Below, one piece after another: positions 24,491 through 61,891 of a stretch of 64,000 nt of DNA (within the stretch, counting starts at the first letter, position 1; every line of letters starts with the position of its first letter). The position numbers and the translations under genes were made by a program. This DNA comes from Mobula hypostoma (lineage: Eukaryota): NCBI RefSeq assembly GCF_963921235.1, contig NC_086117.1, positions 45,880,001-45,944,000 on the forward strand, in the 5' to 3' direction. A model generated the notes under the pieces. It was not told where the DNA came from, made no database searches, and worked only from the letters and a program-made list of their open reading frames with translations.

Positions 24491-24754
24491 ACCCTGTGTG
24501 GAACTGATTATTAAATATACAACATTTTGCATTTTGGAGACAGGCAACAGATTACTTTGATTATTTAAGTTTATTGGATCAATTGGTTAAAGAACATTGT
24601 CACTCTATTGAACATGAGCTCATGCAATTTCCGTGTTTCTGCCACTTGTTTTTAGGATCAGACTCACGGTCTCATTGTGAACGGTTGCTTTGAATCATTG
24701 TTTCTAATATTTACTTCTTGTGTTGCCCTTAAACTTTTATTTTTGTCTAAGCCT

Positions 24755-24780
24755 TCACTGTAACAGAAGCTCATCCTCCC
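24755..24780 (-). CDS. Bikunin terminal exon (..EDELLLQ*)
   Basis: Strong acceptor tttctctttttccag; resembles AMBP C-terminus DEELL; AATAAA at 24736-24741. Confidence 0.85.
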
Positions 24781-27700
24781 CTGGAAAAAGAGAAAGAAAT
24801 TATTTACCTTTGGGCTCACCACAGGCTGGACACAACAGTATGACACCTTGAAGGGTCCCCTCTGTGTTGTGAATATCTCTTGGCTCTCTGAGAAGCTCAT
24901 TCCATTCAATGATACTGATTGACTTCTGTCTCAAATTACTTGTATTCATTTCAAAATTCACCTGCATTCATAATAAAACTATATACCAAGAATTAAACAG
25001 TGCAAAATATATTTCATTCAAGGTCATCACATTCAATAGTGTTAATTGATATTTTTAAAGCTACATCACCATTGTCACTCGTGACATCCCCCTGGGGATG
25101 ATAATACACTATTTCAATGTGTGAGACTCTACCCCAGCTGATTCAGCCCTTCTGTGTACAGTAGCAGAAGAATCTCATTCAGTAGCTGTTCCCAATATAC
25201 ATTAATGATCTGGAAGAGGCAACCAAATGTAGTATATCTAAGTTTGCTGATCATACTAAATTGAGTGGAAAAGAAAATTGTGCAGATGATATGGAGAGTC
25301 TGCGGAAAGATATAGATAGGTTAAGCGAGTGGGCAGGGGTCTGGCAGATGGAGCACAATGTTGGTAAATGCGAGATCATCCACTTTGGAAGGAAAAATGG
25401 AAGATCAGATTATTATTTAAATGATAAAATATTGTAGCATGCTGCCGTGCAGAGGGACTTGGGAGTGCTTGTGCATGAATCACAGAAGGTTGCTTTACAG
25501 GTGCAGCAGGCTCTCAAGAAGACAAATGGAATGTTGGCCTTCATTGTTCAAGGAATTGGATTTAAGAGCAGCGAGGTTATGCTGCAACTGTACAGGGTAC
25601 TGGTGGGGCCACATCTGGAGTACTGCGTGCAGTTCTGGTCTCCTTACTTGAGGAAGGACATACTGTCTTTGGAGGTGGTGCAGAGGAGGTTCACCAGGTT
25701 GATTCCAGAGATGAGGGGGATAGACTATGAGGAGAGATTGAGTTGCCTGGGACTGTACTCGCTGGAATTCAGAAGGATGAGAGGAGATCTTATAGAAACA
25801 TATAAAATTATGAAAGGGATAGATAAGATAGAGGCAGGGAAGTTGTTTACCCAGGTAGGTTAGACTAGAACTAGCGGACATAGCCTCAAGGTTCGGGGGA
25901 GTAGATTTAGGAAGGAGATGAGCAGGAACTGCTTTTACCGAGGAGTGGTGAATCTGTGGAATTCTCCGCCCAATGAAGCAGTGGCTACCTCAGTAAATAT
26001 TTTTAAGACAAGGTTGGATAGTTTTTTACATAGTAGGGGAATTAAGGGTTATGGGGAAGAGGCAGGTAGGTGGAGCTGTGTCCATGGCCTGATCAACCAT
26101 GATCTTATTGAATGGTGGAGCAGGTCTGACAGGCCAGATGGCCTACTCCTGCCCAAATTTTTATGTTCTTATGATATCAGACTGTTGCCCTTCCCCAAAA
26201 AGCCTTTGCTTTGGCCACACCTGAGTTTCAGTGCATCTCTCAGCACGTACTGCTACAAGCCGGAATGTGCCATTCAGCAACACTCCTTAACGGTCATCTT
26301 GATGTGCTGGAAGACCAACAAGTGACCGAGGGCTACAGGTACATAGTTTGCTAGAAATGGTGACACAGCTAAACAGGACGGTGAAGAAGGCATGTGGCTC
26401 ACTTGCTCTCATTGGCTGAGTCATGTTAGAGTTGTACATAGCACAGGTTAGGCCATACCAGGGATGTAGTGTGCAGTTTTGGCCATTAGACTATAACAAG
26501 GATGTCATTAAGCTGGAAGCAGTATGGATAGATTAATCTGGAGGTTTTCCTGGATTGGAGGGCTGGAGTTATAGGGAAAGACTGACTAGCTTGGGACTGT
26601 TAACGCCTGGAACATAGGAGGGTGAAGAGTGACCTTACAGAGGTTTATAAAAATGATGAGGAGCATAGAGAGGTTAGGTATTCACAGCCTTTTTTAGCCC
26701 CTGGTTGGGGGAGTCTAAAACTAGACAGTATAGATTTAAGGTGAGAGGGGAAAGGTTTAACGGAGATTGGAGGGGAAATTTCTCACGCAGAAGGTGGTGG
26801 ATATGTAGAATGAACTGCCGGGGAGGTGGTAGAGGTGGGTAATTACAATGTTTAAAACACATTTGCAGAGTACATGGACAGGAAAAGTTAGAGGGTAATG
26901 GTCCGAATGCAGACGCATTAGAAGAGATCAGATAGGTATCCTGATTGACAAGGACAAGATGGGTCTAGGGCCTGTTTCCATGCTGCAAACTATAGATCTA
27001 TGAAAATACATCAGAGTTGGGACAGTGGCTAGAGATCTCGGGTTTGACCACATCCTACCCCATGGAGCTGAAGTAATCAGGGAAATGAGCTCTAAGCCAC
27101 CATCAGCAGGAGCTCACGGGAACAAGAGACCATAAGGAACATTTATCACTTTCTGGGATGGGGTCACAATACTCCACGCACTCCTTCTCCGTGTAGAACT
27201 TGTTCCCGTTTCCTTCACACCCACCGTACACGAAACGGATACACTTGCCAATGTTGGAATCAAACGCCCAGAGATCAGTGCTCATTCTGCAAGAGCCAAT
27301 TTTTATGGGCAACCTGCAGGCAGCTGTGACAAAGGAAGAGAAGAGGAACGAGAGGCAGGGTTGAGGGCAGTGGTGATATACTAATTAAAACTCCCAACAG
27401 AGGTCACTGTAACACCAGTGTGATCCCCACAGATTGTTACACAGAGACCATTTGGCCCCAAATATGGCCAGTTATTCACAATGAAACCCTAACAACATAC
27501 ATTTTTCACCACTGAGAAAGTGACGTCTTTACCAGGGGATGGAGAAATTGACACTTTTACAAACTTAATATTTTCTTGTTCTTACTGTACATCAAAGTCT
27601 GGTAGTCACTATGACGATGGTAACATTGGCTTTGTTCATGAAGGGTGTGGCTATTCACCCTTACTTGTCAGACGTTGACTTGCTGTACCGGTAGGGCTCA

Positions 27701-30700
27701 GAAACAGGGAACAATTATTCTTTGAGATGCTGATGCAGAATGTCTGCACGGACCCAGCAATAAGCACAGTCTTCACAGAATGGCAATGTAAAGTTACTGG
27801 TTGGTCACCATTATTAGGGAGCTACTGGCACAATATCTCGTAAGGAATCAGGCCGAAGATCCATGCTCACCGATTATAAATCTGTATTTCCAGGTCTCTG
27901 TTCTACTGCACACCACAGAGCTTTACCGTGCACTTTGTAATACAGGCTGGACACTTGCTGTTACAGAAAGATGGTGTCTGGCTGTTACTGTGAGTATATG
28001 GGAAAGGACTGTCATGGTCCAGTCTGTGAAGTCCGCATTCCGGTTCACGGTCCGGTCCATCGACCCTTGCTCCAGGTTTTCCTGTCTACCCTGTTTCTGT
28101 TCCTGTTGAGCTCTAATTGAGGCAGCTGATGCTAGTTGGGGCTGGCTGCATAAATACCTCCAGAGACCAGGGCATGGCTGCTGGATTGTTCTTGTCCTTA
28201 CTCCTTGTATCCCTTCCCCTGCCTTCTGTTTCCTCGCCTGTCTTGTACTCTCGCCTCGCCTGAAGTTCTTGTCTCGCCTTGCATTGCCTGAAGCCTTGCC
28301 TTGTTTTGCTGGTAACTTTTGCCTCATTTCGCCTGAGCCACCCTGTGCCTAGCTCCCTTCCTGTCCCTTGCCTCTGCCGGGTAAGTCAGGCCACCTTGCC
28401 ATTACCCTGCTATTGGTTCTGTCCCTTCCTGTCCCTTGCCTCCATCGGGTAAGCCAGGCCGTCTTGCTGTTATCTACGGTTGGTTCTGTCCCTTCCTGTC
28501 TCTTGCTTCCATCAGGTGGAGTACCGCGCCCTGCCCAGGAGGAGCTTCAAGACCCAAGTCTCAAGCCTCTGGTCTCCAGCCTGGCCTCAAGTTTCTGGTC
28601 TCCAGCCTGGCCTCAAGTCTGAAGACTCCAGCCTTGTCCTGCCTGCCAGCCAAGTCATGTCCTTGCCCAGTTCTGGGATCCAAGCCAGAAGCAAGACCCA
28701 GGTTCTGGGTCCTTGTCCTGTCTCTGGCTCAGAGTCCAAGCCCGGGCTCCTAGCTCTCTTGTCCAGTCCTGTTCCGGGTTCCCAGCTTTTGTGTCCATGT
28801 CCTAGTCCTCACACTGTATCCTAGTCCTGTCCCTAGTACTTCCGTGTCTGTGTCTTGCACTTGGGTCCGTTCCCAGCCACCTCCTTATGACAAGGACTCC
28901 TTCTGAGAGTTGATTATTATCTTTCTCTGCTTTTATAGATACAGGACTCTGCAATCACAATTACCCTGAGATGCTCACTGAGGGTTAGCTTGAGCTCAGT
29001 CACATACCTTCAGTTCGGCAGGTCTGTAGACACTCCCGTTCTGTTTGAAAATTATTCTTGTTTCCAGCACAACCACCATATTTAAATAGTTCACAGGCCA
29101 TCGAGGTTTGGTTATAGAAGAACCGATGGAAAAGCATGAAGCACGGACCACTATCAGGCTCAAGTTGGCAGGATTCTTGATACAAAAGGAAATGAAAATT
29201 GTTAACATTAACAACTATACAAAATGTTTCACTTTCATAAAGTTGCTTCTCAAGTTGTTCCAAAGACAAGAACCCTAGCTCACTCAACCTTTCCTCCTAA
29301 GGCATTCTCTCTAATCCAGAGAGCATCGTGCTAAACCTCCTCTGCAACCTTTCTAAAGCTTCCAAGTCCTTCTTGTAATAAGGTTCAAGAAGACAGTTCA
29401 CCACTTTCTCAAGGGCAACTGGGCACAGGAAACTCAAAGCTAGCTCAACTTGCAAAGCCCACATCCCTAGACCAATTAGAACAAAATTACAAGGGAGAAA
29501 GCGGAATATGGAAGTAACCATTAGGGAATATACAATTCAAAGGGGAAATGTTGTTGAAAACAAATGTGGAACTAATGTTCCCTCTAATATGTAATGATCA
29601 GTGCATGCAAAAATCTTGTGCTGTGCAATTTTTTGCTCAGTGACAGCAATATGTGTGCACTGAATGTTTGAGTAAACCTGAAGCTATTCTAAGGATGATA
29701 ATCTACCAAGTCAACTTTGTTGTTCATTGTTTAAAAGAAGTAACATAATGCATATCAATGAGTCATTGCTGATGTCACATAAACATGCAAATAGTTCACT
29801 ATTTATTGCACAAGTTCCAACGGTGCAACCGGCAAACTGAATGACTTCAAACTTGTGGATAAATAAACATGTCGCTGTTTGCAATCAGAAGTTTTATTTC
29901 TAAGAACACTCAGCCTTTTCAACTTCCATATAGCGGAAGGGGGAGGGGGGTAATATTTTGATAAATATTCATCAAAAGAAGTATACTTAACTTTGTCAGC
30001 GAGGTACAGGGTGACAACCTTTTGTCCACAGTTTAAATTATTTTGTGCGCTGGTAGCAAAAGATGTTTGCACGCGCACACCTTAGAGGGAACGTTGGTGG
30101 TGGAGACAGTATTCTCAAAGTATTTAAGAAGCATCTACAGTAGTGGGGTGGGGATGAGGAAGAGGATGAGGGGTGGAGGGGGGGTGGTGATGAAAGTTGG
30201 GGGGTGGCTGGGTTAAAGAGTCAAAATGTAATCGGCAACTGGTTGTATTGAATGTAATTTGTTGGTGTTGCAATAAAAAATTTAGTGATAAAAAAGAAGC
30301 ATCTACAGTAGACAAGGACTTGGATCAATCCAGTTTTAAAGGCTGTGGACCAAGTGCTGGTAAGTGGAGTTGGTGGACTGAAGGCCCATGGCTGGGCTGA
30401 GTGACCGATGGCTCCACATTATGCTGCGGCTGGTCATCTGCCGGAAGCAGCACCAGGTAATCAAACCAGTGCTGTGCCAAAACAGTACTTAATCCCCTGC
30501 CTAGACCTGTGCCCAGTGTGGTGGTCAAAACACCTCATAATAATACTGCATCATGGTACTGGTTAATGCATACTCTGCATAATTACACTGGTTCTGTTCC
30601 ATTTCTGCAGCCAGTGCCGTACCTGATGTGGCACCCAGCTCACTGTTGGCCAGTTCCCAGCACCGTGATCAGGGTGGCCCAGTGATCTCTCTGTCCTTGC

Positions 30701-33700
30701 ATCCACTGTCCAAGGTGCTGATTTACTCCGTAACACCCCACCTCCCCTGATGTTGAGAGCAGTGATTCACCCTTTGCTGTATCCAGTGCTATACCCACCT
30801 TCATTTGCCTCAATGGCTCCAAAAGCAGACTGTTCCGTGCCTGTCAACACTCTCCTTGCACGAGCCTTGCATGAAAGAGGAATGAAAATGCCTTCAGATT
30901 TGATTAGACATTGATTCAGAAAATAATGCAAAAATATTGTTGTGTACAGTATTTAATATTTCAGTAATATTGTAAATATATTGCTTGATGAAGCAATATT
31001 ATTTTTCAAATAATTCATTGCAGGTTATATGCAAATGTACATAGATGACATATGTCATTAGCCTATCACATCATAAGGGCGTTCGTCAGTAAAGAATGGA
31101 AAGTAAAAAGAAAGAAGGCATGTTTACCCCAGCTTCCCGGTTGTTTCTTTCAATTTGTTTCTGAAGTTACAAAACATAACAGTAGCAATGAGGAAATTTT
31201 AAACCTAACCTGAGACCCCTACCTACCTGTTGAAACACAGCACGTTCCTTCTTCAGAAGGGGAGACAGAGAGACATTTGAGTTTTTTAAAAAAAGTACAC
31301 CATGTTTATTTCTTCAGAAATGAGTGAAAAATGGTTGAGTTTAAAAAAAAGTCAGAAAACAGACAGAATTCATGGGTTCATAAGCGGTGAGTACCGGGTG
31401 ATAATTATAATAAATTTTTAAAAAGCAGAAATGGCTCATTACATCAGAAAGATAGATGTGTTTGAGTGCACAACAGATAACTGGGTGATGTATACTGAAT
31501 GAATTGAGCAGTATTTTGAAGCAAATCAAACTAGTTTTGATTAGTTTCTGGAGTGAGAAAACTTAACAAATATGAAGTATTTATTTGTTTCTTTTAAGTT
31601 GCTTCTTTCCCAAGAGCTGTAAAATACTCAGTCTTCATTTACAAACTAAATATTTTATAATAAGTAACTTGTTTGTGGAAAAACTCAAACAAGTTTACAA
31701 TGTTTCTCAATGTTATATGACCAAGAACATGAACAAGCAATATGGAACATAATTCTGATCAGTTCCATAATGGGTTGAATGAGATTTTATAGCATTGCCC
31801 TATCGAACACTGGCTCAGTACACCTCCTGCCATCAATCCTTATAACCCCCTATTCTGTACATATGTCAGGTAGCCCAGAGATGGAAAACCTTATCAGTTA
31901 CATCTCCCTTGGCCATCCCGTTCATTGCTACTTCAAAACCTTCAGACAGATTTATCAGCTGTGAAACGGTTCAGTCACTTATCTTGGTGTTATTTGCTGA
32001 GATATACCTTGGGCGTATCATTTTTCTCAATTAACAGTGACATTTACAATTTTTCAATCTAAACAAAGAGTTTCCAAGCCCAGTTAAATGTGAAAAATAA
32101 TGTTAATCTCCAAAGTTTTCATCTGCTTCCATTGTAATTTTGGGAACAACCTCATCCCAGGAATTTGTCAGCCTTTGATGTCAATATGTTCAAAGTTCAA
32201 AGTAAATTTATTATCAAAGTGCGCTAATGTCACCATATACAACCCTGAGATTCATTTTCTTGCAGGCAATCACAGTAATTACAAGAAACACAATAGAATC
32301 AATGAAAGACGGCACTCAACAGGATGGACAACAACCAATATGAGGGGGAAAAACAATAAACTGTGCAAATACAAAAAGAAAGAGAAAATAAAGAAATAAT
32401 TAAAAATAATCAGTAAGTATCAAGAATGTGAGATGAAGATTCATTGAAAGTGAGTCTATAGATTGTGGGAACAGCTCTGCAATGGGGTGAGTGAAGATGA
32501 CTAAAGCTACTCCCTTTGGCTCAAGAGCCTGATGGCTGAGGGGTGAGAATTGTTCCTGAACCTGGTAGTGCAGATGTTGAGGTTTCTGTATCTCCTCCCT
32601 TACAGCAGCATGGCCTGAGTGGTGGGGGTCCTTGATGATGGATGCTTCTTTGCTGCAGCAGGGCTCCATGTAAATGTGCACAATGGTGGGGAGGGCTACA
32701 AGTGTGATGGACTGGGCAGCATCCACTACTTTTTGGAGGCTTTTCCAACCAAAGGCATTGGCGCTTCCATGCCAGGCCTCGATGCAACTGATCAGTATCC
32801 TCTCTTCCACATATCTATAGAAGTTTGTCGAAGTTTTAGATGACATGCCAAATCTTTGCAAATTTCTAAGAAAGTAGAAGCATTGCAGTTCTTTCTTCAT
32901 GATCACACCTATATGCTGGACCCACGACAGAAGCTCTGGAATGATAACACTGAGGTTATCCAGGTTGTGGTTGTTTTACTTACAGAGGATTTGGTAAATC
33001 CCTTGTTGTAATTGTTTTTTAATGCTTTAGTAAAATATTAGTTGAATTAATACAAGACTAAAATCATATGTTTTACTGACATACTATTTGTATTTTTAAC
33101 AAACACATGTACAAGGGGTGATTGATAAGTTTGTGGCCTAAGGTAGAAGGAGTCAATTTTAGAGAGCTGTATAACTCATCTCCTTCTACCTTAGGCCACA
33201 AACTTATCAATCGTCCCTGCTGTGGACCACCTGGAGGTCCAAGACGCTCTCGTTACATGCACGTGCAGTTCAACTCTTTGAGTGATAATGCAGAAAGTTT
33301 GAAGTTAATAACTCATCACCTTCTACCTTAGGCCACGAACTTATCAACCACCCCTGCTGTGGACTACTTCTACAAAGAAGGGATCTGTATGCTCCACGAC
33401 CGCTGGACTAAGTGTGTACATGTAGGAGGGGACTATGTTGAAAAATAAATGTGCTAGGTTTTCTAAAATTGACTCCTTCTACATTAGGCCACAAACTTAT
33501 CAATCACCCCTCATATTTTTCACAATATGTGGTGTTGGTCTCCACCTACTGAAGGAAAAGCAGTATACCAGGTCCAATTTTCATTTCTCATTGGCTAAGT
33601 GTTAGTACATTACACATTTACTGTGACTGTGTAACTTTTTATTGGTTCCTTCTTATCTCAGGAATTTAACTCAATTGAAGAATAAAGGTGACAGGCACTG

Positions 33701-35294
33701 CAAAAGCGCCATCTTTGTTTCCTTTTTTCTTTATTTCTTTGTTCCTTTTTTCTCCTCTCAGTTTCATAAGCTCTCTATCTGCTCCTTTGTTTAAACTTTA
33801 AGACAAACAATTACGAAGCAACAAGTATTTACTCATTCTTGGACTCCCAAAGGAACCTGGGTATCAGAAAAATCATCAGATCCCACACCCACTTCTGAGT
33901 TCTGACAAACGATCCTTGGCATTCTCTCTCCACAGAAGCTGTCTTCCCTCTGCGTAGTTCAAGGATTTTATGTCTGTAATTGAACATGAGTTTCCTTGGG
34001 GTGAGCCAATAGAGGCTTGGACTAGTGTTGTTGTTTGTTTGATCTTTGGGCTCACAGTAAGGTTGTGTTTGCTCTCATGTGCATTCAGCAGACTGGAAGA
34101 AAATAAACTTCCTAAAAGTTGAAACTCAGCCTCAACCTCTTCTGAGTGTTGAAGTGTAACCCCATCGTGTTCCCGCTGCCCCCGGACAGTGATACTGCAC
34201 AGCGTAACCCCTTCGTGGTACACAGCCGCAACATCCCCCACAGCTCTGATTAATCCTAAACTAATCACAGGACAACTTCCAACCACCACTTAACCAACCC
34301 AGTATGTCTTTGCACTGTGGGAAGGAACAGGAGCACCCGGAAAAATCCACAGGGAGAATGTGCAGACGTTCCTTACAGAACGGCACCACAATTGAACGGC
34401 AAACTCTGGAAAGCCCCAAGCTGTAATAGTGCCGTGCTCACTATGCTACTGTAGTTATCGCATGTAAGCACCGATCAATGCCACTGCTCAGCCCAAAGCT
34501 ACACCAATCAAAGCAACCCACTTACCCGGTTTACCAGAGTTATTGCATTAACTATATCTCTGGGACAGAATCAGAATATTATCTAATTTATTATCACTGG
34601 GCTTGTCATTCCCAAACCCAGTGTACCAGAGTTAGTGCGTTAACGACTTTTCCATAGGGCAGATGCCCAAGAAGCGGTGAGAAATATCGCCATCATACCA
34701 GCACATTCATTACAGCATCAACTTAACTTACTGAGCACAGTGTACATGAGTTACTGAATAAGCTGCCAACTTCATCCCATCTGTCAAATTACTATATCAA
34801 TTACAATCTCTTAAACCAGCGCCTCAGGGTTAGTTAAATTAACCAACACCCAGAGCACCAGAATAAAACAAGCATACTACTTGCAATAACTACTGGCCCT
34901 TATACAGCATTAATCTCAGTGCCTAACTCTGCTGTTCCAGACTTACAGACGTCATTATGATCCCAGAACCAAGGGGTACCAGAGTTCCTACAACAACTGC
35001 AAGACAATGATAACAGTGATGGCCTTAACATAGCTCCTAAGCCTAGTGGACCAAAGTTAATGCATTAACTGCTGTTTCTGAGCCCAATATATCAGTCACA
35101 GCACTATCTGTGGTCATTTACCCAGTGTACAACTACAGTTCATGGGCCCACATCCCTGAGTTCAGTCTGGCTTGGATTACCTGATTCTCATTAAAGTTCG
35201 CCCATAGTAGAAGATCAGCATTTGTTTTCCGTGGGGCTGCTGTCCCTGTGCCCAACAGCTGCATGGCAAGGAGAAGGCACAGAGTGCACCACAT
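24755..35294 (-). CDS. AMBP-derived bikunin-only gene, copy A (5 coding exons, 549 nt, 182 aa)
   Basis: Exons 35181-35294, 30799-30865, 29008-29175, 27150-27323 and 24755-24780 join in frame (phases 0,1,1,1) into signal peptide - RARR - two Kunitz domains - EDELLLQ*. Confidence 0.8.
25185..27000 (+). mobile_element. Two CR1-like 3' fragments
   Basis: [31 protein letters not shown]. Confidence 0.88.
27150..27323 (-). CDS. Bikunin Kunitz domain 2 exon (174 nt)
   Basis: [58 protein letters not shown]; bikunin-type LWAFD and GNGNKFY; donor weak (A|gtgata). Confidence 0.93.
28010..28892. mobile_element. Solo LTR (family 1) in the intron between the Kunitz exons, TSD AGGAC
   Basis: TGTCAT...ATGACA termini; AGGAC at 28005-28009 and 28893-28897. 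Confidence 0.88.
29008..29175 (-). CDS. Bikunin Kunitz domain 1 exon (168 nt)
   Basis: [56 protein letters not shown]; six Cys, bikunin-type YNxTSMACE and ECLQTCRT. Confidence 0.95.
29573..30096. mobile_element. Non-autonomous DNA transposon, hAT-like (mirror ~62593-63116)
   Basis: Terminal inverted repeats aatgttccctctaa / ttagagggaacgtt; TSD not clear. Confidence 0.6.
30126..30311 (+). mobile_element. Short 5'-truncated retroinsertion with 18-bp TSD
   Basis: AAGAAGCATCTACAGTAG at 30126-30143 and 30294-30311 flanking ~150 nt that ends in AATAAA and an A-rich tail; TTT/AA insertion site. Confidence 0.75.
30799..30865 (-). CDS. Copy A linker exon (AMBP exon 7 equivalent), [22 protein letters not shown]
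   Basis: Polypyrimidine tract + aag acceptor, phase 0 to 1, R-x-R-R furin site, donor G|gtgggt. Confidence 0.85.
30938..31570 (+). mobile_element. Gypsy-type LTR + PBS-like site + gag start, truncated (mirror ~61120-61752)
   Basis: TGTTGTG...CATAACA (30938-31181), then [18 protein letters not shown] gag-like N-terminus. Confidence 0.6.
32400..32930 (-). mobile_element. Rex1/L2-like LINE 3' fragment (mirror ~59760-60290)
   Basis: [28 protein letters not shown] motif. Confidence 0.75.
33112..33513. mobile_element. Mariner-type MITE with TA TSD (mirror ~59176-59577)
   Basis: Long TIR c[a/g]aggggtgattgataagtttgtggcctaa..., TA on both sides, extra internal TIR copies. Confidence 0.85.
34210..34455 (-). 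mobile_element. tRNA-derived V-SINE-like element (mirror ~58235-58480)
   Basis: ccgggtgctcc..ttcccacagtgcaaagac core typical of fish SINEs. Confidence 0.55.
35181..35294 (-). CDS. Copy A exon 1: signal peptide + lipocalin N-terminal stub
   Basis: [38 protein letters not shown]|gtaat; ends NFxxxx in phase 0 like lipocalin exon 1. Confidence 0.8.
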
Positions 35295-35393
35295 TCTGCT
35301 GGTCTGCTCCAAAGTAACACAGCTACGTGGTTCTGCCTGGAGTTATCAGACAGACGATGTCCCAATCCCAGTGTGTGTGGAACAGTGACAGCT

Positions 35394-35431
35394 CAAAGGT
35401 CCATGTTGACATTATTTTGTTATTCATTAAT
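35394..35431. promoter_or_regulatory. Putative HNF4 + HNF1 liver promoter module of copy A (mirror ~57258-57295)
   Basis: CAAAGGTCCA at 35394-35403 and GTTATTCATTAAT at 35419-35431, 100-140 nt upstream of the ATG. Confidence 0.5.
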
Positions 35432-35714
35432 CACAACTTGATGGATTTACTCAGAAACTACTAGAACCCTTGAGTGGGCACATTAACTGGTCTGAGCTTG
35501 GAATATCAGCGGCGGGTCAGAGAATGAGTGAGTTGGAGAATTAGACTATGTGATGGACTGAGCTCTGTGCAGGTTATTACTTGTCATCACTCCTCATTGA
35601 ACAAGAGGATCGACCTTTGGTCAACAAGGAGTGTGGAATGTATATAGGGAGCAAAACCAGACTCTTCGAAATATCTGTCCACTGGTGATTGCACGTTTGC
35701 AAATCCTTAGCAAA

Positions 35715-37500
35715 TGAGTTAACCCATCCCAGTATATGAAGAGCAAGAGGATAAGATGTGAGAGAATAGGACCTATCAAGTGTGACAGTGGAAAAGTGTG
35801 TATGGAACCGGAGGAGGTAGCAGATGTACTTAATGAATATTTTGCTTCTGTATTCACTACGGAAAAGGACCTTGGCGATTGTAGGGATGACACAGTCAAC
35901 TGAAAAGTTTGAGCATATAGATATTAAGAAAAAGGATGTGCTGGAGATTTTGGAAAGCATCAAGTTGGATAAGTCACCGGGACCAGACAAGATATACCCC
36001 AGACTACTGTGGGAAGTGAGGGAGGAGATTGCTAATCCTCTGGCAATGATCTTCGCATCATCAATGGGGACAGAAGAGGTTCCAGAGGATTTGAGGGTTG
36101 CAAATGTTGTTCCCTTATTCAAGAAAGGGTGTAGAGATAGCCCAGGAAATTATAGACCAGTGAGTCTTACTTCAGTGGTTGGTAAGTTGATGGAGAAGAT
36201 ACTGAGAGGCAGGATTTATGAACATTTGCAGAGGCATAATATGATTAAGAATAGTCAGCATGGCTTTGTCAAAGACAGGTCGTGCCTTACGAACCTGACT
36301 GAATTTTTTGAGGATGTGACTAAACACATTGATGAAGGTAGATCAGTAGATGTAGTGTATATGGATTTCAGCAAGGTATTTGATAAGGTACCCCATGCAA
36401 GGTTTCTTGAGAAAGTAAGGAGGCATGGGATCGAAGGGGACCTTGCTTTTTGGATCCAGAATTGGCTTGCCCACAGAAGGCAAAGAGTGGCTGTAGACAG
36501 GTCATATTCTGCATGGAGGTCTGTCACCAGTGGTGTGCCTCAGGGATCTGTTCTGGTACCCCTACTCTTTGTGATTTTTATAAATCACCTAGATGAGGCA
36601 GAGGAGAGATGGGTTAGTAAGTCTGTGGTTGACACAAAGGTTGGGAGTGTTGTGGATAGTAGGGAGGGCAGTCAGAGATTACAGCGGGACATCGATAGGA
36701 TGCAAAACTGGGCTGAGAAGTGGCAGATGGAGTTCAACCCGGATAAGTGTGAGGTGGTTCATTTTGGTAGGTCAAATATGATGGCAGAATATAGTATTAA
36801 TGGTAAGACTCTTGGCAGTGTGGAGGATCAGAGGGATCTTGGGATCCGAGTCCATAGGACACTCAAAGCTGCAGCGCAGGTTGACTGTGTGGTTAAGAAG
36901 GCATATTGTGCATTGGCCTTCATCAACCATAGGATTGTGTTCAAGGGCCGAAAGGTAATGTTACAGCTTTATAGGACCCTGGTCAGACCCCACTTGGAGT
37001 ACTGAGTTCTGGTCGCCTCACTACAGAAGGGATGCAGAGGAGATTTATAAGGATGTTGCATGGATTGGGGAGAATGCCTTATGAGAATAGATTGTGTGTA
37101 CTTGGCCTTTTCTCCTTGGAGTGATGGAGGATGAGAGGTGACCTGATAGAGGTGTATAAGATAATGAGAGGCATTGATCGTGTAGATAGTCAGAGGCTTT
37201 TTCTCAGGGTTGAAATGGCTAACACGAGAGGGCTAGTTGGTTCTTGGAAGTAGGTACAGAGGAAATGTCAGGGGTAAGTTTTTTACTCTGAGAGTGGTGA
37301 GTGTGTGGAATGGGCTGCCAGTGACAGTGGTGGAGGCAGATACGATAGAGTTTTTGAAGATACTCTTGGATAGGTACATGGAGCTTAGGAAAATAGAAGC
37401 TATGGGTAACCCTAGGTAATTTCTAAAATAAGTGCATGTAAGGTACAGCATCATGGGCCGAAGGGCCTGTATTGTGCTGTAGGTTTTCTATGTTTCTAAA
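35715..37500 (+). mobile_element. CR1-like LINE RT region, 393-aa open segment (mirror 55190-56975, frameshifted)
   Basis: NYRPVSLTS, QHGF, DFSKVFDKVPH, GVPQGSVL; catalytic FADD degraded to SVVD. Confidence 0.92.
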
Positions 37501-39900
37501 CTAAGAACGTCAACATCTAGATCATTACCATATAACATGAAACGAAGTGGTCTCAACAATGACCCCCGCAGAACACCACTAATCACTGGCAGCCAACCCA
37601 AAAAGGCTCCTTTATTCCCACTCTTTGCCTTCTGCTGCTCAGCTATTCTTCTGTCCATGTTAGAATCGTTCCTGCAGTATCTTGTTTATCAGAATCAGAA
37701 TCAGGTTTATTATCACCGGCAAATGTCGTGAAATTTGTTAACTTAGCAGCAGCAGTTCAATGCAATACATAATATAAAAGAAAAAGGAAAAAAATAAAAT
37801 AATAATGATAATAATAAATACACAAGTAAATCAATGACAGTATATTTATATTGAATAGATTAAGAATCGTACAAAAAACAGAAATAATATATATTAAAAA
37901 AGTGAGATAATGCTCAAAGGTTCAATGTACATTTAAGAATCAGATGGCAGAGGGAAGAAGCTGTTACTGAATCGCTAGGTGCCTCAGCAGCCTTATATGT
38001 GGCACCTTATCAAAGATCATCTGAAAATCCAAGTAAACAACATCTATAGGCTCTACAGATCTATAGATCTCCAGTCCTGACGAAGGGTCTCGGCCTGAAA
38101 CGTCGACTGCACCTCTTCCTAGAGATGCTGCCTGGCCTGCTGCGTTCACCAGCAACTTTGATGTGTGTTGCTTGAATTTCCAGCATCTGCAGAATTCCTG
38201 TTATCTACAGACTCTCCTTAGTCTAAACTACCTATTACTTCTTCAGAGAATTCCAACAGTTTTGTCAGCTAGATTTCCCCTTATGGAAACCATTCTGACT
38301 TTAGCTTCTATTAACATGTGCCTCCAAGTACCCCAAAACCTCATCCTTTGTAATGGACTCTAACGTCTTGCCGACCACTGAAGTCAGGCTAACTGGCCTA
38401 GAATTTCTTGTCTGTTGCCTCACTCCCTTCTTAAAGTGTGGGGTGACAATTGCAAGTTTCCAGTCCGCCGGAACCATTCTAGAATCTCGTGGTTCTTGAA
38501 GGATCACTACCAATGTCTCCACAATCTTTTCAGCTACTTCTTTCAGAACCCTGGGGTTCTGTCCAGATGACTTAACTGCCTCCAGGCCTTTCAGCTTCCC
38601 AAGCTCCTTCTCCTTAGTAATAGAACCCGCACTCACTTCTGCTCCCTCAGTCTCTTGAATTTCTGGCATGTTGCTGGTGTCTTCCATAGTGAAGATTCAA
38701 AATACTTGTTCAATTCATCCACCATTTGTTTCTTCCTCATTACTACATCTCCAGCAGTCCGATATCCACTCTCGCCTATCTTTTACACTTTATTTATCTG
38801 AGAAAACTTCTGGTACCCTCTTTTACACGAATGGCTAGCTTACCTTCATATTTCATCTTTTCATTCCCTATTGCCTTTTAGTTAGCCTTCTTTTGGCTTT
38901 TAAAAACTACCCAGTCCTCCAGATTGTCCCTAACTTTTGTTATATTTTTTGCCCTCCTTTTACTTTTAATCCTGACTTTGACGCTACAGTTGTCTCATGC
39001 CCCCTTTATCTTCTTTGAGATGAAAGAAGCATGCACCTTCTGAGTTGCTGCCAGAAACTCAGGCCATTGCTTTTCTTCCATCATCCCTGCTAGTTTCCCC
39101 TTCCAATCAACTTTGGCCAGCTCTTCCCTCGTGCCTCTGTCAGTACCTTTACTCAACTATAATACCGATACAGTACATCCAATTTTAGCTTCTCCCTCTC
39201 AAACTGCAGGGTAAATTCTATTGAATTATGATCATGATCACCTCAGGTTTCTTTTACCTTAAGCTTTCTAATCAAATATGGTTCATTGCATAACACCAAA
39301 TCTGGAATTGCGTTTTTCCCTAGTGGAATTGACCAAAGCTGTTCTAAAATGCTTTCTTGTAGTCATTCTACAAATCCCTTCACTGGAATCCAGCACCAAT
39401 CTGATTTTCCCAATCTACATGCATATTGAAATTCCCCATAACTATTGTAACGTTGCCCTTTTTACTCACCTTTTCTATCTCCCATTGTAGTTTGTACCCC
39501 ACATCCTGGCTATTGTTCAGAGGCCTGTAAGAAACACCCATCAGGGTCTTTTTACCCTTACAGTTTCTTAACTCTACGCACAAGAATTCTAAATCTTTTC
39601 ATCCTATGCCACTTTCTTCGAAGGATTTGACTTCATTTGTTTCACCTTCTTGGTTCCCCTTCCTAACTTTTCAATAAAGTGTTTGGCACCCGGCCATGAT
39701 CTTCTTTCAACCATGACTCTGTGATGCCTACAATGGCTTTCCTGCCAATTTCTAACTGCACTGTAAGCTCACCTACCTTATTTCATACACTGCATGCATT
39801 TGAATCTAACTCCTTCAGTCCTATATCCACAACCCTTCTTCTTACTTTTATCTGCATTTTGTCCAAAATTAAACTCTTATCCCCTTTTATATTTCCCTGT
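37500..39900 (-). mobile_element. CR1-like LINE with nested LINE-tail and Penelope insertions (mirror 52790-55190)
   Basis: ORFs 38301-38687 and 39380-39583 with CR1 EN/RT motifs. Confidence 0.85.
38072..38109 (+). ncRNA. Minimal type I hammerhead ribozyme motif (Penelope terminal repeat); mirror 54581-54618 (-)
   Basis: CAGUC-CUGACGA-AGG(GUCUCGG)CCU-GAAA-CGUC^GACUG: intact core, stem I CAGUC/GACUG, stem II AGG/CCU, palindromic ACGU stem III. Confidence 0.7.
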
Positions 39901-40224
39901 CTTATTACAGTATTTATCCTGCATACTTCAGTAAGCTTTCCTGCAATTTAATTCCCTTTCAAGGTGTTGAAAGCACTCCCATCCCCCTCGCCCTTGAACC
40001 TTTGCAATCCCCTCAGTGTTGTTGGGGAGGGGTCTCCAGGACTTACACCCAGTAGTGAAAAAGTGCTGGAGACTTGGTGGTGTCCTGCTGCCTTTATCTC
40101 ACTGAGGGGACGTGGTTACTGGGTTTGGGCAGTGCTGTCAGCGTAGCCTGGATGAGCAACTGCAATGCACTTGTAGCTAATACGCACGACAGCCACCATT
40201 GGTAGAACGGATGAGAGTTTAGAG

Positions 40225-40755
40225 TGGTGACAGGCTGCATCACTGTCTGGTATGGCGGGGAGGGGGGCTACCGCACAGGACCGAAAGAAGCTGCAGGGGG
40301 TTGTAAATCTAGTCAGCTCCATCTTGGATACTAGCCTACAAAGCACCCAGGACATCTTTAGGGAACAGTGTCTCAGAAAGGCAGCGTCCATTATTAAGGA
40401 CCTCCAGCACCCAGAGCATGCCCTTTTCTCACTGTTACCATCAGGTAGGAGATACAGAAGCCTGAAGGCACACACTCAGCGATTCAGGAACAGCTTCTTC
40501 CCCTCTCCCATCTGATTCCTAAATGGACGTTGAACCCTTGGACACTACCTCACTTTTTTAATATACACTATTTCTGTTTTTGCACGATTTTTAATCTATT
40601 CAATATATGTATACTGTAATTGATTGATTGATTTATTATTATTTTAATTTTGTTTTTTTTTCTTTTATATTAAGTATTGTATTGAACTGCTGCGGCTAAG
40701 TTATCAAATTTCACATCACATGCTGGTGATAATAAACCTGATTCTGATTCGGATT
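40225..40755 (+). mobile_element. Rex1/L2-like LINE 3' end with (ATTCTG)n tail (mirror ~51935-52465)
   Basis: DRKKLQGVV..LLPSGRRYRSL..RFRNSFFP. Confidence 0.8.
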
Positions 40756-41004
40756 CTTCTGAATGGGGCTGCTTCGTCCTGGGTTGTGTCGAGCTTCTTG
40801 AATGTTGCTGGCGCTGCACAGATCTAAACAGGTGGAGAGTATTCGATCAGGCTCCTGACTTGTGGCTTGTAGATGGTGGATAGGACATAGGGTGTTAGGA
40901 GCTGAGTCACTCTCTGCAGGTTACTCAGCCTCTGACCTGCTCCCGAGTCTCAGTACTTCTAGAATGCCTTGGGGTTTTGTCCAGGAACTCACTGTGTTTA
41001 GCAG

Positions 41005-41816
41005 CATTCAATCCTGACCAGATTTCCAGTCCCTGCTGCTGAAAAGCATCCATGGCATGATGCTACGTCCACCATACTTTACAGTAGGGATGGAGTTACC
41101 TGGTTGATGCTCAGGATTAGATTTGCGCCACACATACCACTTAGTGTTGTGGCCAAAATTGAATTCATTCTTCCCTCTCCCAGTAAATGTTCCCCGTGCC
41201 ACTGGCTGCAACACAAACCCAAAGCATGATCGATCCACCCCCGTGCTTAACAGTTGGAGAGGGGTTCTTTTCATGAAATTCTGCACCCTTTTTTCTCCAA
41301 ACATACCTTTGCTCATTGTGGCCAACAAGTTCTACTCAAAAGGTTCAAAGAAACATCTAAGCAAGCCTGATGCATTTTGGAAACAAGTCCTGTGGACTGA
41401 TTAAGTTAAAATAGAGGGAAGAATGAATTCAATTAAATACCAGCAAATTCTGGAAGCAAAAATCACACCATCTGTAAAAAAGCCAAAGATGAAAAGAGGA
41501 TGGCTTCTACAACAGGATAATGAACCTAAACACACCTCAAAGTCCACAATGGACTACCTCAAGAGGCGTAAGCTGAAGGTTTTGCCATGGCTCTCACAGT
41601 ACCCTGACCTAAACATCATCGAGAATCTGTGGATAGACCTCAAAAGAGCAGTGCATGCAAGACAGCCCAAGAATCTCACAGAACTAGAAGACTTTTCAGC
41701 CTTTTGCAAGGAAGAAAATAGCTGGCTACAAAAAGCATTTCCCCCAAACAAGAATTGAAAGACTCTTAGCTGGCTACAAAAAGCATTTACAAGCTGTGAT
41801 ACTTGCCAAGGGGGTG
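41005..41816. mobile_element. Scrambled Tc1 transposase mosaic at the inner arm boundary (mirror 50865-51685)
   Basis: QQDNEPKH, WLSQYPDLNIIENLW, VLWTD on plus; PTVKHGGGS and PTVKYGGRS segments on minus. Confidence 0.88.
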
Positions 41817-41879
41817 CCTCTTTTACTGGGTAAATCCCTGTGTGTTGCTTGAATTTCCAGCATCTGCAGAATTCCTCGT

Positions 41880-42275
41880 GTTTATGTCAATTTATTAGGT
41901 TGTAAATTAATTTTTAAAGCTTTAGAAATTGTAGAAAAAACAGATTTCCCAAACTGTTTCAATAGAGAACACAACCAAAACATATGTGTCAATGTAGCTA
42001 TCTCAGTTTTACACCTATCACACTGACTATTAACATTAGGAAATATTTTAGACAGTTTCTCCTTTGTCAAATAATAACGATGTACAATTTTAAATTGAAT
42101 TAGAGAATGACTGGCATGCATCGAAGAACAGTTAACCAACTTCAAAATTCGCAACTAATCCTCTGTTATCAAGGTCATGTTAAGCTCTCTTTCCCAATCT
42201 TGCTTAATCTTAAATAGAGGATAATTATCCTGTTGTAATAGTAAATTGTAAATTTTCCCAATAAAACCTCTTTAT
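41880..42275 (-). mobile_element. L1/Tx1 LINE ORF2 C-terminal fragment
   Basis: IQFKIVHR..CDRC..THMFWLC zinc knuckle. Confidence 0.8.
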
Positions 42276-42279
42276 AATC

Positions 42280-43000
42280 CTCATGTGCTTTGTTTGCTCC
42301 TTACTTATGAAGCTTTACATATTTTTCCTTTTTCTTTTGACTAAATTCATCATCCCTCTGGACATCCAACGTCATCTTCTCTTTCCATCCCTGTCCTTCT
42401 TTCTAACAGGAACAGACCTTTCTGGTACTCTGTGCAATTGAACACCCTCCACATGTCTGATGTTGCCTTGACAGAAAAAAGGTGATCCCAATTAAGTCTT
42501 CTTAGTTCATAATTTGCCCTCCTCCAACTTAAGCCTCTCCTGCAAGGACTATACCCATCCTTATCTAAAGCTATCCTGAAAATTAAGGAGCTGTGGTCAC
42601 TGTTCCCTAACCGATCACCCACTGAAAGGTAAGTCACCTGGCCAGGCTCATTACCCAACACCAGGTCCAGTACAGCCCCTCCTCTCATCGGGCCGTCCAC
42701 ATATTGATTTAAGAAACCTTCCTGGATACCCTTAACAAACTCTACCCCTTCTAAACCCCTTACACTAAGAAGGTCCCAGTTTATATTAGGGAAGTTGAAC
42801 TCCCCCATGACGACAGCCCCGTTATTTTTACTAATTTCCTTGATATGATCACCTATCTGTTCTTCAATGTCCCAGTGGCTATTAGGGGGTCTCTAGTACA
42901 ATTCCATCAGTGTGATTGCACCCTTCCTATTCCTGAGTTCCCCCCAAATGGACTCAGTATCTGACCACTCCATCATGTCTCTGCTGAGTGCAGCAATGAT
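42280..43000 (-). mobile_element. CR1-like endonuclease fragment
   Basis: MGEFNFPNINW..LDLVLGNE..LGNSDH. Confidence 0.85.
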
Positions 43001-45056: not shown

Positions 45057-45634
45057 TCTATATACTACTAAAACTCTCATGCTCTGTCTGTCTGTTTGTG
45101 ACCTCCAATTAGCGCAAACGGTGCATTACAGTGGCACTTTTTTTGGCTAAATCGAATTAAAATGCGCTAACTTACAGAATACAGGCACAGTTCAGGGCTG
45201 TATATTAGTATAAAATTGCTCATTCACCAAAATCAACTGGCTTCCATTTAACCCGAGAGCCAATCAGCCATCGTGGAAATCGGGACACAACAGCCCGACG
45301 CGTGCACACAGCCAGCCTCAGCAGCGACACCTACTGGAGCAAAAGGGCAGGGCAGCTCTATTTCGCGGGGTCACATTCTGCTAATCACCATCAGCATGTG
45401 CAGGATTGGGACAGATCTAACAGCCACCCATCAATAAGAGATAATTAAATCTTATTGTAATGACGTACTTCGAGACACCCATAAAACCCTTTGCTGCAGT
45501 CAAAGGACAGCGGTGACTATATCACGTCCATTTAGGAGAGCGCCAACCACATCATCAAGTACAATCAGCATCCTTTGATGTAACTGCTTCGTATCTTCTA
45601 TCCAGCGTTAGGGTAAAAAAAATGGTCAGCCTAA
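45057..45634 (+). mobile_element. Possible non-autonomous Helitron-like element
   Basis: A|TCTATATACTACTAAAA 5' end, (CTGT)n near the start, CTAA|T 3' end; no clear hairpin. Confidence 0.35.
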
Positions 45635-57394: not shown

Positions 57395-57508
57395 ATGTGG
57401 TGCACTCTGTGCCTTCTCCTTGCCGTGCAGCTGTTGGGCACAGGGACAGCAGCCCCACGGAAAACAAATGCTGATCTTCTACTATGGGCGAACTTTAATG
57501 AGAATCAG
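57395..57508 (+). CDS. Copy B exon 1 (signal peptide + lipocalin stub)
   Basis: [38 protein letters not shown]|gtaat; mirror of 35181-35294 with one M/V change. Confidence 0.8.
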
Positions 57509-61824: not shown

Positions 61825-61891
61825 GCTCGTGCAAGGAGAGCGTTGACAGACATGGAAGGGTCTGCTTTTGGAGCCATTGAAGCAAATGAAG
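61825..61891 (+). CDS. Copy B linker exon, [22 protein letters not shown]; Kunitz exons not in window
   Basis: Furin site followed by EGSA, similar to AMBP RVRR-AVLPQEEEGSG; intact splice sites. Confidence 0.87.

What the first reader, a model, noticed from the sequence alone, without database searches (positions are those of the whole stretch)
24755..35294. Natural 'bikunin-only' AMBP paralog: alpha-1-microglobulin exons 2-6 missing, exon 1 fused in frame to the linker exon
Seen: a lipocalin-type exon 1 (signal peptide, ends NFNENQ, phase 0), 4.3 kb of mostly transposon sequence with no intact GxW, TxY or other lipocalin exon that I could find, a phase 0-1 exon with furin site RARR, two intact bikunin Kunitz exons (168 and 174 nt, the sizes I recall for AMBP exons 8 and 9), and a DELL-type last exon with AATAAA. 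Established: vertebrate AMBP co-encodes A1M (exons 1-6) and bikunin (exons 7-10), and introns 1 and 6 are both phase 0, so losing exons 2-6 preserves the frame. From recollection (verify), the same deletion engineered in mouse disturbs bikunin maturation. Inference: a 182-aa secreted precursor that releases a free double-Kunitz inhibitor independent of A1M. No ORF-level view shows this gene.
Basis: partly seen in the sequence, partly recalled or inferred. Interest (0 to 1): 0.92.

Follow-up and report, generated by a model that had tools for sequence, protein, structure and literature searches.

The report
Bikunin-only AMBP gene in rays
This ray gene is a real, highly expressed version of the vertebrate AMBP gene that has lost its whole alpha-1-microglobulin part and makes only the protease inhibitor bikunin; all rays and skates sampled share this layout, which contradicts the textbook claim that the two proteins are always made together.

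Summary
Five minus-strand exons with GT-AG borders (35294-35181, 30865-30799, 29175-29008, 27323-27150, 24780-24755) give a 182-aa frame: signal peptide, NFNENQ, RARR, two Kunitz domains.

RNA contigs from two organisms join exon 1 directly to the linker exon and the linker to Kunitz 1. Contig lengths leave no room for other exons, and depth is in the thousands.

Shark, lungfish and teleost A1M probes find only exon 1 here and in four other batoid loci. The same probes find A1M exons in frog and white shark loci.

The layout is not special to this genome. RefSeq already models 180-186-aa "protein AMBP" or "inter-alpha-trypsin inhibitor-like" genes in seven rays and skates. The window matches the two Mobula hypostoma models exactly. 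Sharks keep the full 353-aa AMBP.

So this looks like the batoid AMBP gene, stripped of A1M exons 2-6 in the batoid stem lineage and under purifying selection since (dN/dS 0.23-0.32). In this species it is duplicated as an inverted pair, with copy B at 57395 onward. The copies are diverging fast at the chondroitin-sulfate site.

Whether batoids keep A1M elsewhere could not be tested. Earlier notes of this scan on this same stretch (palindrome, CS-site burst, breakpoint) agree. I found no paper on it.

The parts
35295..35347 (-). 5' UTR; transcripts start about here
   Evidence: Contig X1 record 8 runs colinear from exon 1 to 35339 plus 8 more letters. Contig X3 record 24 starts at 35324.
35181..35294 (-). 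Exon 1, 38 codons: signal peptide plus the vestigial A1M N-terminus ending NFNENQ; phase 0 donor
   Evidence: It is 47% identical over 34 aa to exon 1 of sawshark AMBP (E 0.004). It ends at the residue where shark AMBP continues with F-x-G-x-W.
30866..35180 (-). Intron 1, 4.3 kb, no A1M exons, mostly repeats
   Evidence: tblastn with shark, lungfish and teleost A1M gives nothing below E 1. Only low-depth pre-mRNA-like contigs and repeat-derived depth are seen.
30799..30865 (-). Linker exon (equivalent to canonical exon 7): A-RARR convertase site and the glycosaminoglycan-site region (TEQSAFG); phase 0 in, phase 1 out
   Evidence: It is orthologous to the white shark exon, with similar flanking intron sequence. 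Loose ends join it to exon 1 and to Kunitz 1.
29227..29230 (-). Junction of a 1.0-kb deletion in intron 2 of copy A, 52-55 bp upstream of the Kunitz 1 acceptor; also the outer end of arm A
   Evidence: The M. birostris locus L002 16077-17097 and copy B 63460-64000 continue the LINE fragment that is cut off here.
29008..29175 (-). Kunitz 1 exon, 168 nt, phase 1-1; P1 Phe; NQT sequon
   Evidence: PF00014 E 1.4e-19. 1BIK residues 25-78, E 4e-30.
27150..27323 (-). Kunitz 2 exon, 174 nt, phase 1-1; P1 Arg. It is skipped in the RefSeq model that is identical to this copy.
   Evidence: PF00014 E 5.8e-18. RNA runs X1 and X2 hold 75% of its words. The K2-skipped translation equals P0241.
24550..24780 (-). 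Last exon: REDELLLQ, stop at 24757-24755, 3' UTR with AATAAA at 24741-24736 and 24575-24570
   Evidence: The 616 nt that follow exon 1 in the 761-nt contig equal 66+168+174+208.
29230..41816 (-). Arm A of the inverted duplication (5' half of copy A plus 6.5 kb upstream)
   Evidence: blastn 12,589 bp, 99.0% identical to 63459-50886.
50886..63459 (+). Arm B of the inverted duplication (5' half of copy B)
   Evidence: It is colinear with the single-copy M. birostris locus up to the window end.
57395..57508 (+). Copy B exon 1 (Val11 instead of Met11)
   Evidence: Together with the copy B linker exon it equals residues 1-60 of P0242.
61825..61891 (+). Copy B linker exon (RRALTDMEGSAFG, which keeps the E-G-S-A site)
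   Evidence: The RNA loose end at 35180 in X2 equals 61826-61843, unique to copy B.
41817..50885 (.). 9.1-kb spacer between the arms, with a LINE reverse-transcriptase ORF at 48219-49505
   Evidence: RVT_1 E 5e-25.

Best explanation
This is a functional gene descended from AMBP in which A1M exons 2-6 no longer exist. Exon 1 (signal peptide plus the first ~19 residues of the former A1M) is spliced in frame to the exon that in canonical AMBP opens the bikunin part. The loss happened before rays and skates diverged, and the gene has been kept under purifying selection since. In this species (sequence identical to the Mobula hypostoma models) the whole gene was then duplicated in inverted, head-to-head orientation, after the split from the manta lineage. 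Both copies are transcribed. Inferred steps: signal peptidase removes about 19-20 residues; a furin-type convertase cuts after RARR and discards a ~20-residue propeptide; a free two-Kunitz inhibitor of about 139 aa is secreted without any A1M partner. Kunitz 1 has P1 Phe (chymotrypsin-like targets) and Kunitz 2 has P1 Arg (trypsin- or plasmin-like targets). Copy B keeps the E-G-S-A serine that should carry chondroitin sulfate. Copy A has changed it to E-Q-S-A and lost a nearby Asp, so it may be a glycan-free form. Copy A also has a Kunitz-2-skipped 124-aa isoform model.
For: Gene model. Splicing: loose ends at 30867 (X2, X8) equal 35183-35196, the end of exon 1. The loose end at 35180 (X2) equals 61826-61843, the copy B linker. 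Loose ends at 30799 (X2, X8) equal 29154-29175, the start of Kunitz 1. The 402-nt and 761-nt contigs have exactly the lengths expected without extra exons. Expression: summed contig word depth in X2 (table 2, a poor measure of expression) is 16839 over exon 1 and 8575 over the linker, against 3-9 for contigs inside the intron. Of the linker depth, 38% carries copy A letters and 62% copy B letters at 30831/30832. Absence of A1M exons: with positive controls in frog L001 (E 1e-4 to 1e-11), white shark L005 and the window's own C8G exons (E 0.002-0.04). Orthology of the linker exon and phase 0. Conservation: 180-186-aa models in Mobula birostris, M. hypostoma, Hemitrygon akajei, Hypanus sabinus, Amblyraja radiata, Leucoraja erinacea and Rhinoraja longicauda. 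Full A1M-bikunin is present in the sharks Mustelus asterias (353 aa), Pristiophorus japonicus and Carcharodon carcharias. dN/dS between rays and skates is 0.23-0.32 at dS 0.6-0.8. Batoid sequences form one clade placed with sharks and teleosts. Duplication.
Against: No protein-level data exist: signal cleavage, furin cleavage, glycosaminoglycan attachment and inhibitor specificity are inferred from motifs. The splice joints were read from loose ends and contig arithmetic, because the joint table showed only the 15 best of 157. The tissues of the RNA runs are coded and unknown. Copy-specific inclusion of Kunitz 2 is unresolved. The two linker variants in run X2 could in principle be alleles. 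The tree has weak support (80-87) on 107 columns. The AlphaFold model was of low confidence (mean pLDDT 53).
Confidence: 0.85

Rival explanations
1. It is an extra, lineage-specific paralog, and a canonical full-length A1M-bikunin AMBP still exists elsewhere in batoid genomes.
For: The protein searches could only see proteins of 101-320 aa, so a 350-aa batoid AMBP would have been missed. Frogs have both a canonical AMBP (L001) and bikunin-only genes with the same layout (Rana temporaria P0159, L006), so coexistence is possible. Extra bikunin-only copies are modelled in M. hypostoma and Hypanus sabinus.
Against: In several batoids RefSeq gives the name 'protein AMBP' to the bikunin-only model. 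The same search found shorter A1M-containing isoforms or fragments for three sharks but none for batoids. The batoid genes group as one clade where the species tree would put an ortholog. The gene lies beside C8G, the sister lipocalin.
Confidence: 0.4
2. Copy A, the copy in the finding, is a decaying or subfunctionalising duplicate; the working bikunin gene of this species is copy B.
For: Copy A against M. birostris shows 17 nonsynonymous and 2 synonymous changes (dN/dS 2.4). Three amino-acid changes on the A lineage hit the glycosaminoglycan-site region. Copy A has a 1.0-kb deletion ending 52-55 bp from the Kunitz 1 acceptor and a 1.6-kb upstream deletion. The RefSeq model for it is the 124-aa K2-skipped form. 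Runs X1, X3 and X8 show only copy B-type letters.
Against: The frame is intact and all 12 Kunitz cysteines and RARR are kept. Copy A-type letters make up 38% of a very deep linker signal in X2. Changes cluster in the reactive loop and glycan site, as expected for diversifying inhibitors. X3 and X8 are another organism that lacks the duplication, so their B-type letters are simply the ancestral state.
Confidence: 0.25
3. The inverted pair is an assembly artefact (two haplotypes placed head to head) and there is really one gene.
For: The arms are 99% identical and the inner 4.5 kb almost identical. The M. birostris assembly has one copy. I could not lay DNA reads.
Against: There is no N anywhere in the window, and a 9-kb spacer with its own LINE joins the arms. 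The copies differ by two kilobase-scale indels and 111 substitutions. Copy B is a full 12.7-kb gene with its own Kunitz exons that differ from copy A (Q104R, tail SGEDELLLQ). Both variants are present in one RNA run.
Confidence: 0.08
4. It is an exon-skipping isoform of a normal AMBP gene whose A1M exons are present but diverged or missing from the assembly.
For: Exons 2-6 together are frame-neutral, so skipping would be tolerated.
Against: No A1M exon was detected in intron 1 of five batoid loci from independent assemblies, with working positive controls. There is no gap in the intron. Introns are as short as 2.45 kb in Amblyraja. Only repeat-type or trace pre-mRNA depth is seen inside the intron.
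Confidence: 0.03

Closest known systems
Canonical vertebrate AMBP (for example Mustelus asterias XP_078082874.1, 353 aa; human AMBP)
   Same: Homologous exon 1 (signal peptide, NFxxxQ, phase 0). Orthologous linker exon that opens one residue before RxRR. Kunitz exons of 168 and 174 nt in phase 1-1. A short acidic last exon (EDELL). A conserved N-glycosylation sequon in Kunitz 1 and P1 Arg in Kunitz 2.
   Different: Exons 2-6, the whole A1M lipocalin barrel of about 165 residues, are absent from the gene, not merely skipped. Reviews state that the A1M-bikunin construction is preserved in all species studied (PMC7965949).
A1M-knockout mouse with A1M exons removed and bikunin exons kept (Bergwik et al. 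2020, as summarised in PMC7965949)
   Same: It is the engineered counterpart: a signal peptide joined to bikunin without A1M.
   Different: In the mouse this gives defective high-molecular-weight bikunin forms and hepatic ER stress. In batoids the arrangement is ancient and under purifying selection, so bikunin maturation there cannot depend on a co-translated A1M.
RefSeq models 'protein AMBP' / 'inter-alpha-trypsin inhibitor-like' of batoids (XP_062929981.1 and XP_062929982.1 of M. hypostoma, XP_072096210.1, XP_072908203.1, XP_059799787.1, XP_032904754.1, XP_055515707.1, XP_078282097.1)
   Same: They are the same gene. Copy A with Kunitz 2 skipped is identical to XP_062929981.1, and copy B exon 1 plus linker is identical to XP_062929982.1.
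   Different: They are automatic models without comment. No paper in the searchable library mentions AMBP or bikunin in batoids.
Anuran 'inter-alpha-trypsin inhibitor-like' genes (Rana temporaria, 184 aa, locus L006; Engystomops pustulosus)
   Same: The Rana gene has the same five-exon layout: a 38-codon exon 1 ending ENFEVIK, then a linker with a basic site and E-G-S-G, then two Kunitz exons. Its 2.75-kb intron 1 has no A1M exons.
   Different: These genes do not group with the batoid clade in the tree, where the tetrapod rows are unresolved, so their origin looks independent. A canonical AMBP is seen in another frog (L001).

Membership tests
AMBP (A1M-bikunin precursor) | N-terminal lipocalin domain (A1M) encoded by exons 2-6 | tested here: not met
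   tblastn with A1M of two sharks, a lungfish and a teleost finds only exon 1 in the window and in the loci of M. birostris, Hemitrygon, Amblyraja and Rhinoraja. Controls were positive in frog, white shark and the window's C8G.
AMBP (A1M-bikunin precursor) | Lipocalin-type exon 1: signal peptide plus an NFxxx motif, ending in phase 0 just before GxW | tested here: met
   The 114-nt exon is 47% identical to sawshark AMBP residues 7-40 and ends where shark AMBP continues with F-L-G-D-W. The neighbouring C8G exon 1 ends the same way, after NFNIQQ.
AMBP (A1M-bikunin precursor) | Basic RxRR convertase site at the start of the bikunin part, on its own exon entered in phase 0 | tested here: met
   A-RARR here compares with D-RARR in white shark and D-RTRR in Mustelus. 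The exon borders and flanking intron sequence are conserved.
AMBP (A1M-bikunin precursor) | Two tandem Kunitz domains on separate phase 1-1 exons | tested here: met
   PF00014 matches twice. Six cysteines are found in each domain. The best PDB relatives include bikunin 1BIK.
Bikunin as the inter-alpha-inhibitor light chain | Serine in an acidic E-G-S-G/A context that carries the chondroitin sulfate linking the heavy chains | tested here: inconclusive
   The motif is conserved in the other batoid models seen and in copy B (EGSA or EGSG) but changed to EQSA in copy A. Glycan attachment itself is not testable with these tools.
Bikunin as the inter-alpha-inhibitor light chain | Covalent assembly with ITIH heavy chains | not testable with these tools
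   This needs plasma biochemistry. The presence of ITIH genes in batoids was not examined.
Kunitz/BPTI serine protease inhibitors (PF00014) | Kunitz fold signature above the Pfam gathering score | tested here: met
   70.4 and 65.3 bits against a cut-off of 21.

The most novel reading that the evidence does not exclude
Rays and skates as a whole have no alpha-1-microglobulin. Their only AMBP gene lost the lipocalin exons in the batoid stem lineage. That would make batoids the first vertebrate group known to live without A1M, and a natural test of the idea that A1M is needed as a co-translated chaperone for bikunin. In Mobula hypostoma the freed bikunin gene has since duplicated, and the copies are diverging at the glycan site and the reactive loop.
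Probability: 0.4. Interest if true: 0.8.

Novelty: new variant of a known kind. Interest (0 to 1): 0.62.

Why it matters
Why A1M and bikunin are co-encoded has been an open question since 1986, and reviews state that the arrangement is preserved in every species examined (PMC7965949). Removing the A1M exons in mice disturbs bikunin maturation and stresses the ER, which led to the proposal that A1M acts as a chaperone for bikunin.

A whole vertebrate superorder that has made bikunin without A1M, under purifying selection over a synonymous divergence of 0.6-0.8, shows the coupling is dispensable. It also gives natural sequences to test what compensates: the retained ~20-residue propeptide, changes in bikunin itself, or other factors.

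It raises a simple, checkable question: do batoids have A1M at all? The young inverted duplicate in this species adds a case of rapid divergence at a glycosaminoglycan site and an inhibitor reactive loop.

Tried and rejected
1. A representative search with the Kunitz 2 exon was swamped by multi-Kunitz proteins and returned no AMBP.

2. A Pfam scan of stop-free pieces of intron 1 found nothing. It also missed the C8G exon 2 control, so it has no power and is not used as evidence.

3. A word-indexed search with the 98-aa frame around Kunitz 1 gave a single frog hit because of the length filter. That hit became the stepping stone to the batoid proteins.

4. A 43-aa similarity between 33934-34059 and sawshark A1M residues 134-176 (35% identity, E 1.3) was rejected. 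It is not significant, and it runs across the position of a canonical intron (LYG|RTP, seen split in frog L001).

5. The AlphaFold2 model on a 14-row alignment had mean pLDDT 53. Its secondary structure fits two Kunitz domains, but it is too weak for a fold search, which I did not run.

6. Look-ups of the Mustelus isoform X2 (not on record) and of the M. hypostoma copy B locus (no DNA served) failed. Copy B's Kunitz exons are therefore known only from its protein model.

8. I did not submit the spliced 182-aa sequence as typed letters to any tool.


Full report
**1. What is in the sequence**

On the minus strand, five exons with canonical AG/GT borders give a 549-nt frame of 182 codons. The exons are 35294-35181, 30865-30799, 29175-29008, 27323-27150 and 24780-24755.

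- Exon 1 has 38 codons. It encodes a hydrophobic signal peptide and ends with ANFNENQ in phase 0.
- The 67-nt second exon starts A-RARR and leaves in phase 1.
- The 168-nt and 174-nt exons are each one Kunitz domain with six cysteines. Both match PF00014 at 70 and 65 bits, and Kunitz 1 matches bikunin 1BIK domain 1 at E 4e-30.
- The last exon adds REDELLLQ and the stop.
- The window has no N.

**2. Is the exon 1 to linker splice real?**

I laid contigs of four RNA runs from two coded organisms on 29340-35339 and checked the loose ends against the window.

- Letters hanging off the linker exon's 5' side (X2, X8) are the last letters of exon 1 (35183-35196).
- Letters hanging off exon 1's 3' side (X2, five contigs) are the start of the linker exon of the twin copy (61826-61843).
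- Letters hanging off the linker's 3' side (X2, X8) are the first 19-22 letters of Kunitz 1 (29154-29175).
- A 402-nt contig of X1 has 234 letters beyond exon 1, which equals 66 + 168 (rest of the linker plus Kunitz 1).
- A 761-nt contig of X3 has 616 letters beyond exon 1, which equals 66 + 168 + 174 + 208.

There is no room for the roughly 500 nt of A1M exons.

Summed contig word depth in X2 (table 2, a poor measure of expression) is 16839 over exon 1 and 8575 over the linker exon. Contigs inside the intron have depth 3-9, apart from dispersed repeats. Contigs run colinear into the 5' UTR up to about 35347, so this is the first exon. The transcript length points to the distal AATAAA (24575-24570) rather than the one at 24741-24736.

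**3. Are A1M exons hidden in the intron?**

A per-piece Pfam scan was uninformative because it also missed a true lipocalin exon of the neighbouring C8G gene.

I reached real A1M sequences stepwise. A frog Kunitz fragment led to batoid and shark AMBP proteins.

tblastn with the A1M parts of Pristiophorus, Mustelus, a lungfish and a teleost gave these results:

- In the window they hit only the two copies of exon 1 and, weakly, the paralogous C8G exons at 4055-4625.
- Nothing below E 1 lies in 30866-35180.
- The same holds for the loci of Mobula birostris (L002), Hemitrygon akajei (L004), Amblyraja radiata (L003) and Rhinoraja longicauda (L007). Their first introns are 2.45 to 4.3 kb.
- The same queries find A1M exons in a frog locus (E 1e-4 to 1e-11) and in the white shark locus L005.

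The exons are therefore gone, not skipped.

**4. Relation to canonical AMBP**

Sharks have the full gene. Mustelus asterias isoform X1 is 353 aa, with A1M, D-RTRR, an E-G-S-A site and two Kunitz domains.

In the white shark locus, exon 6 ends in phase 0 (…GTC AAG|gt). The next exon starts acaag|GAT CGT GCA CGG AGA and ends G|gtggga. The ray exon starts gcaag|GCT CGT GCA AGG AGA and ends G|gtgggt. The linker exon is thus the orthologue of canonical exon 7.

Exon 1 aligns with shark exon 1 and stops exactly where sharks continue with the GxW motif.

Mice lacking the A1M exons translate signal-peptide bikunin but make defective high-molecular-weight forms and show ER stress. The same review states that the AMBP construction is preserved in all species described.

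**5. How widespread is it?**

RefSeq holds bikunin-only models of 180-186 aa with this exon 1 and linker. The species are:

- Mobula birostris
- M. hypostoma (two adjacent genes)
- Hemitrygon akajei
- Hypanus sabinus (two genes, the second with a different first exon)
- Amblyraja radiata
- Leucoraja erinacea (256-aa model with a spurious N-terminal extension, no lipocalin)
- Rhinoraja longicauda

The window's copy A with Kunitz 2 skipped is letter for letter the 124-aa M. hypostoma 'protein AMBP-like'. Copy B's exon 1 plus linker equals the first 60 residues of the 183-aa M. hypostoma 'inter-alpha-trypsin inhibitor-like'.

dN/dS between rays and skates is 0.23-0.32 at dS 0.6-0.8. In a small tree the batoid sequences form one clade next to sharks and teleosts. 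Frog bikunin-only genes, which have the same five-exon layout, do not group with the batoid clade; they fall in the unresolved tetrapod part of the tree.

The simplest reading is a single loss of exons 2-6 in the batoid stem lineage, and separate events in frogs. From my own knowledge that stem lineage is on the order of 200 million years old; this was not tested here.

I found no paper that mentions AMBP or bikunin in batoids, including the recent mobulid genome preprint.

**6. The local duplication**

Positions 29230-41816 and 63459-50886 are inverted copies, 12.6 kb long and 99.0% identical, around a 9.1-kb spacer that holds a LINE.

The M. birostris locus is single copy and colinear with copy B's 5' half and copy A's 3' half. 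Relative to it, copy A lacks 1.0 kb of intron 2. The cut goes through a LINE fragment and ends 52-55 bp before the Kunitz 1 acceptor. Copy A also lacks 1.6 kb upstream. Copy B keeps both stretches.

So the 'outer breakpoint' noted earlier is a deletion in copy A, not the end of the duplication. Copy B is a complete 12.7-kb gene with its own Kunitz exons outside the window.

With M. birostris as outgroup there are 52 changes specific to A, 59 specific to B, and 216 on the remaining branch (shared by A and B or specific to M. birostris) in 12,534 sites. The duplication is therefore younger than the split from the manta lineage.

Differences are about ten times rarer in the inner 4.5 kb of the arms, as expected from arm-to-arm gene conversion.

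The 67-nt linker exon carries six differences where 0.6 are expected, and five are nonsynonymous:

- A lineage: Ala44Val, Asp47Gly, Gly50Gln.
- B lineage: Thr48Met.

Copy A against M. birostris shows 17 nonsynonymous and 2 synonymous changes. Several lie at P1' and P2' of Kunitz 1.

In run X2, 38% of the linker depth has copy A letters and 62% has copy B letters. The other three runs show only the ancestral B-type letters.

**7. Mechanism**

Shown:
- the gene structure
- the splice pattern
- abundant transcripts
- conservation of the layout

Inferred from motifs and from established AMBP biology:
- signal peptide removal
- furin-type cleavage after RARR, which releases a short propeptide that is the relic of the A1M N-terminus
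- secretion of free bikunin with an N-glycan at NQT
- chondroitin sulfate on the E-G-S-A serine in copy B, possibly lost in copy A (E-Q-S-A)
- Phe and Arg P1 specificities

**8. What remains open**

- Whether batoids have any A1M gene elsewhere. My searches could only see proteins of 101-320 aa.
- Which isoform of copy A dominates.
- Direct read support for the inverted pair.

**9. Verdict**

The gene is already modelled in public annotation and is a batoid-wide feature rather than a peculiarity of this locus. Its interest lies in what it says about the A1M-bikunin coupling, and in the possibility that batoids lack A1M altogether.

Noticed in passing
window 4055-12540, minus strand: A C8G-like lipocalin gene lies downstream of copy A on the same strand. 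Exon 1 ends SPIDKIQAQQNFNIQQ in phase 0 near 12376, exon 2 is at 11410-11547, and later exons are at 4518-4640 (TDYTNYA motif) and 4055-4159. A LINE sits inside the gene around 7.4-8.4 kb. In Amblyraja the C8G-like gene lies upstream of the bikunin gene instead (L003 1-2932), so the gene order differs between skate and ray.
   Followed up: partly
window 36750-41250 versus 51450-55950: The inner 4.5 kb of the palindrome arms has only about 5 differences (0.1%), against about 1.3% in the outer 7.5 kb that holds the gene. This suggests recent arm-to-arm gene conversion near the spacer.
   Followed up: partly
window 48219-49505, minus strand: A 429-aa open frame with a reverse-transcriptase domain (RVT_1, E 5e-25) sits in the spacer between the arms. 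It is a fairly intact LINE.
   Followed up: partly
protein P0243 (Hypanus sabinus XP_059799788.1): The Atlantic stingray has a second, adjacent bikunin-only gene. Its first exon is unrelated to the lipocalin-type exon 1 (MDNHSTIVLL…) and is joined to the same linker exon, so it appears to have acquired a new signal-peptide exon.
   Followed up: no
L006 10001-17073 (Rana temporaria): A frog 'inter-alpha-trypsin inhibitor-like' gene has the same layout: a 38-codon exon 1 ending ENFEVIK, then a linker with E-G-S-G, then two Kunitz exons, with no A1M exons in its 2.75-kb intron 1. This looks like an independent loss of the A1M exons in a duplicate.
   Followed up: partly
L005 10001-22385 (Carcharodon carcharias): The RefSeq model 'inter-alpha-trypsin inhibitor-like' (232 aa) is a mis-built fragment of the canonical shark AMBP. 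It starts inside A1M exon 4, skips exon 6 and the linker exon, and takes in a piece at 12977-13096 that resembles transposon (LINE-derived) sequence. The true A1M exons 3-6 and the linker exon are present in the locus.
   Followed up: partly
window 29008 (3' end of the Kunitz 1 exon): The 402-nt RNA contig of run X1 stops exactly at the Kunitz 1 exon border. This fits a branch in the assembly graph between Kunitz 1 to Kunitz 2 and Kunitz 1 to last exon. K2-skipped isoforms are also modelled in M. hypostoma and Mustelus asterias.
   Followed up: no
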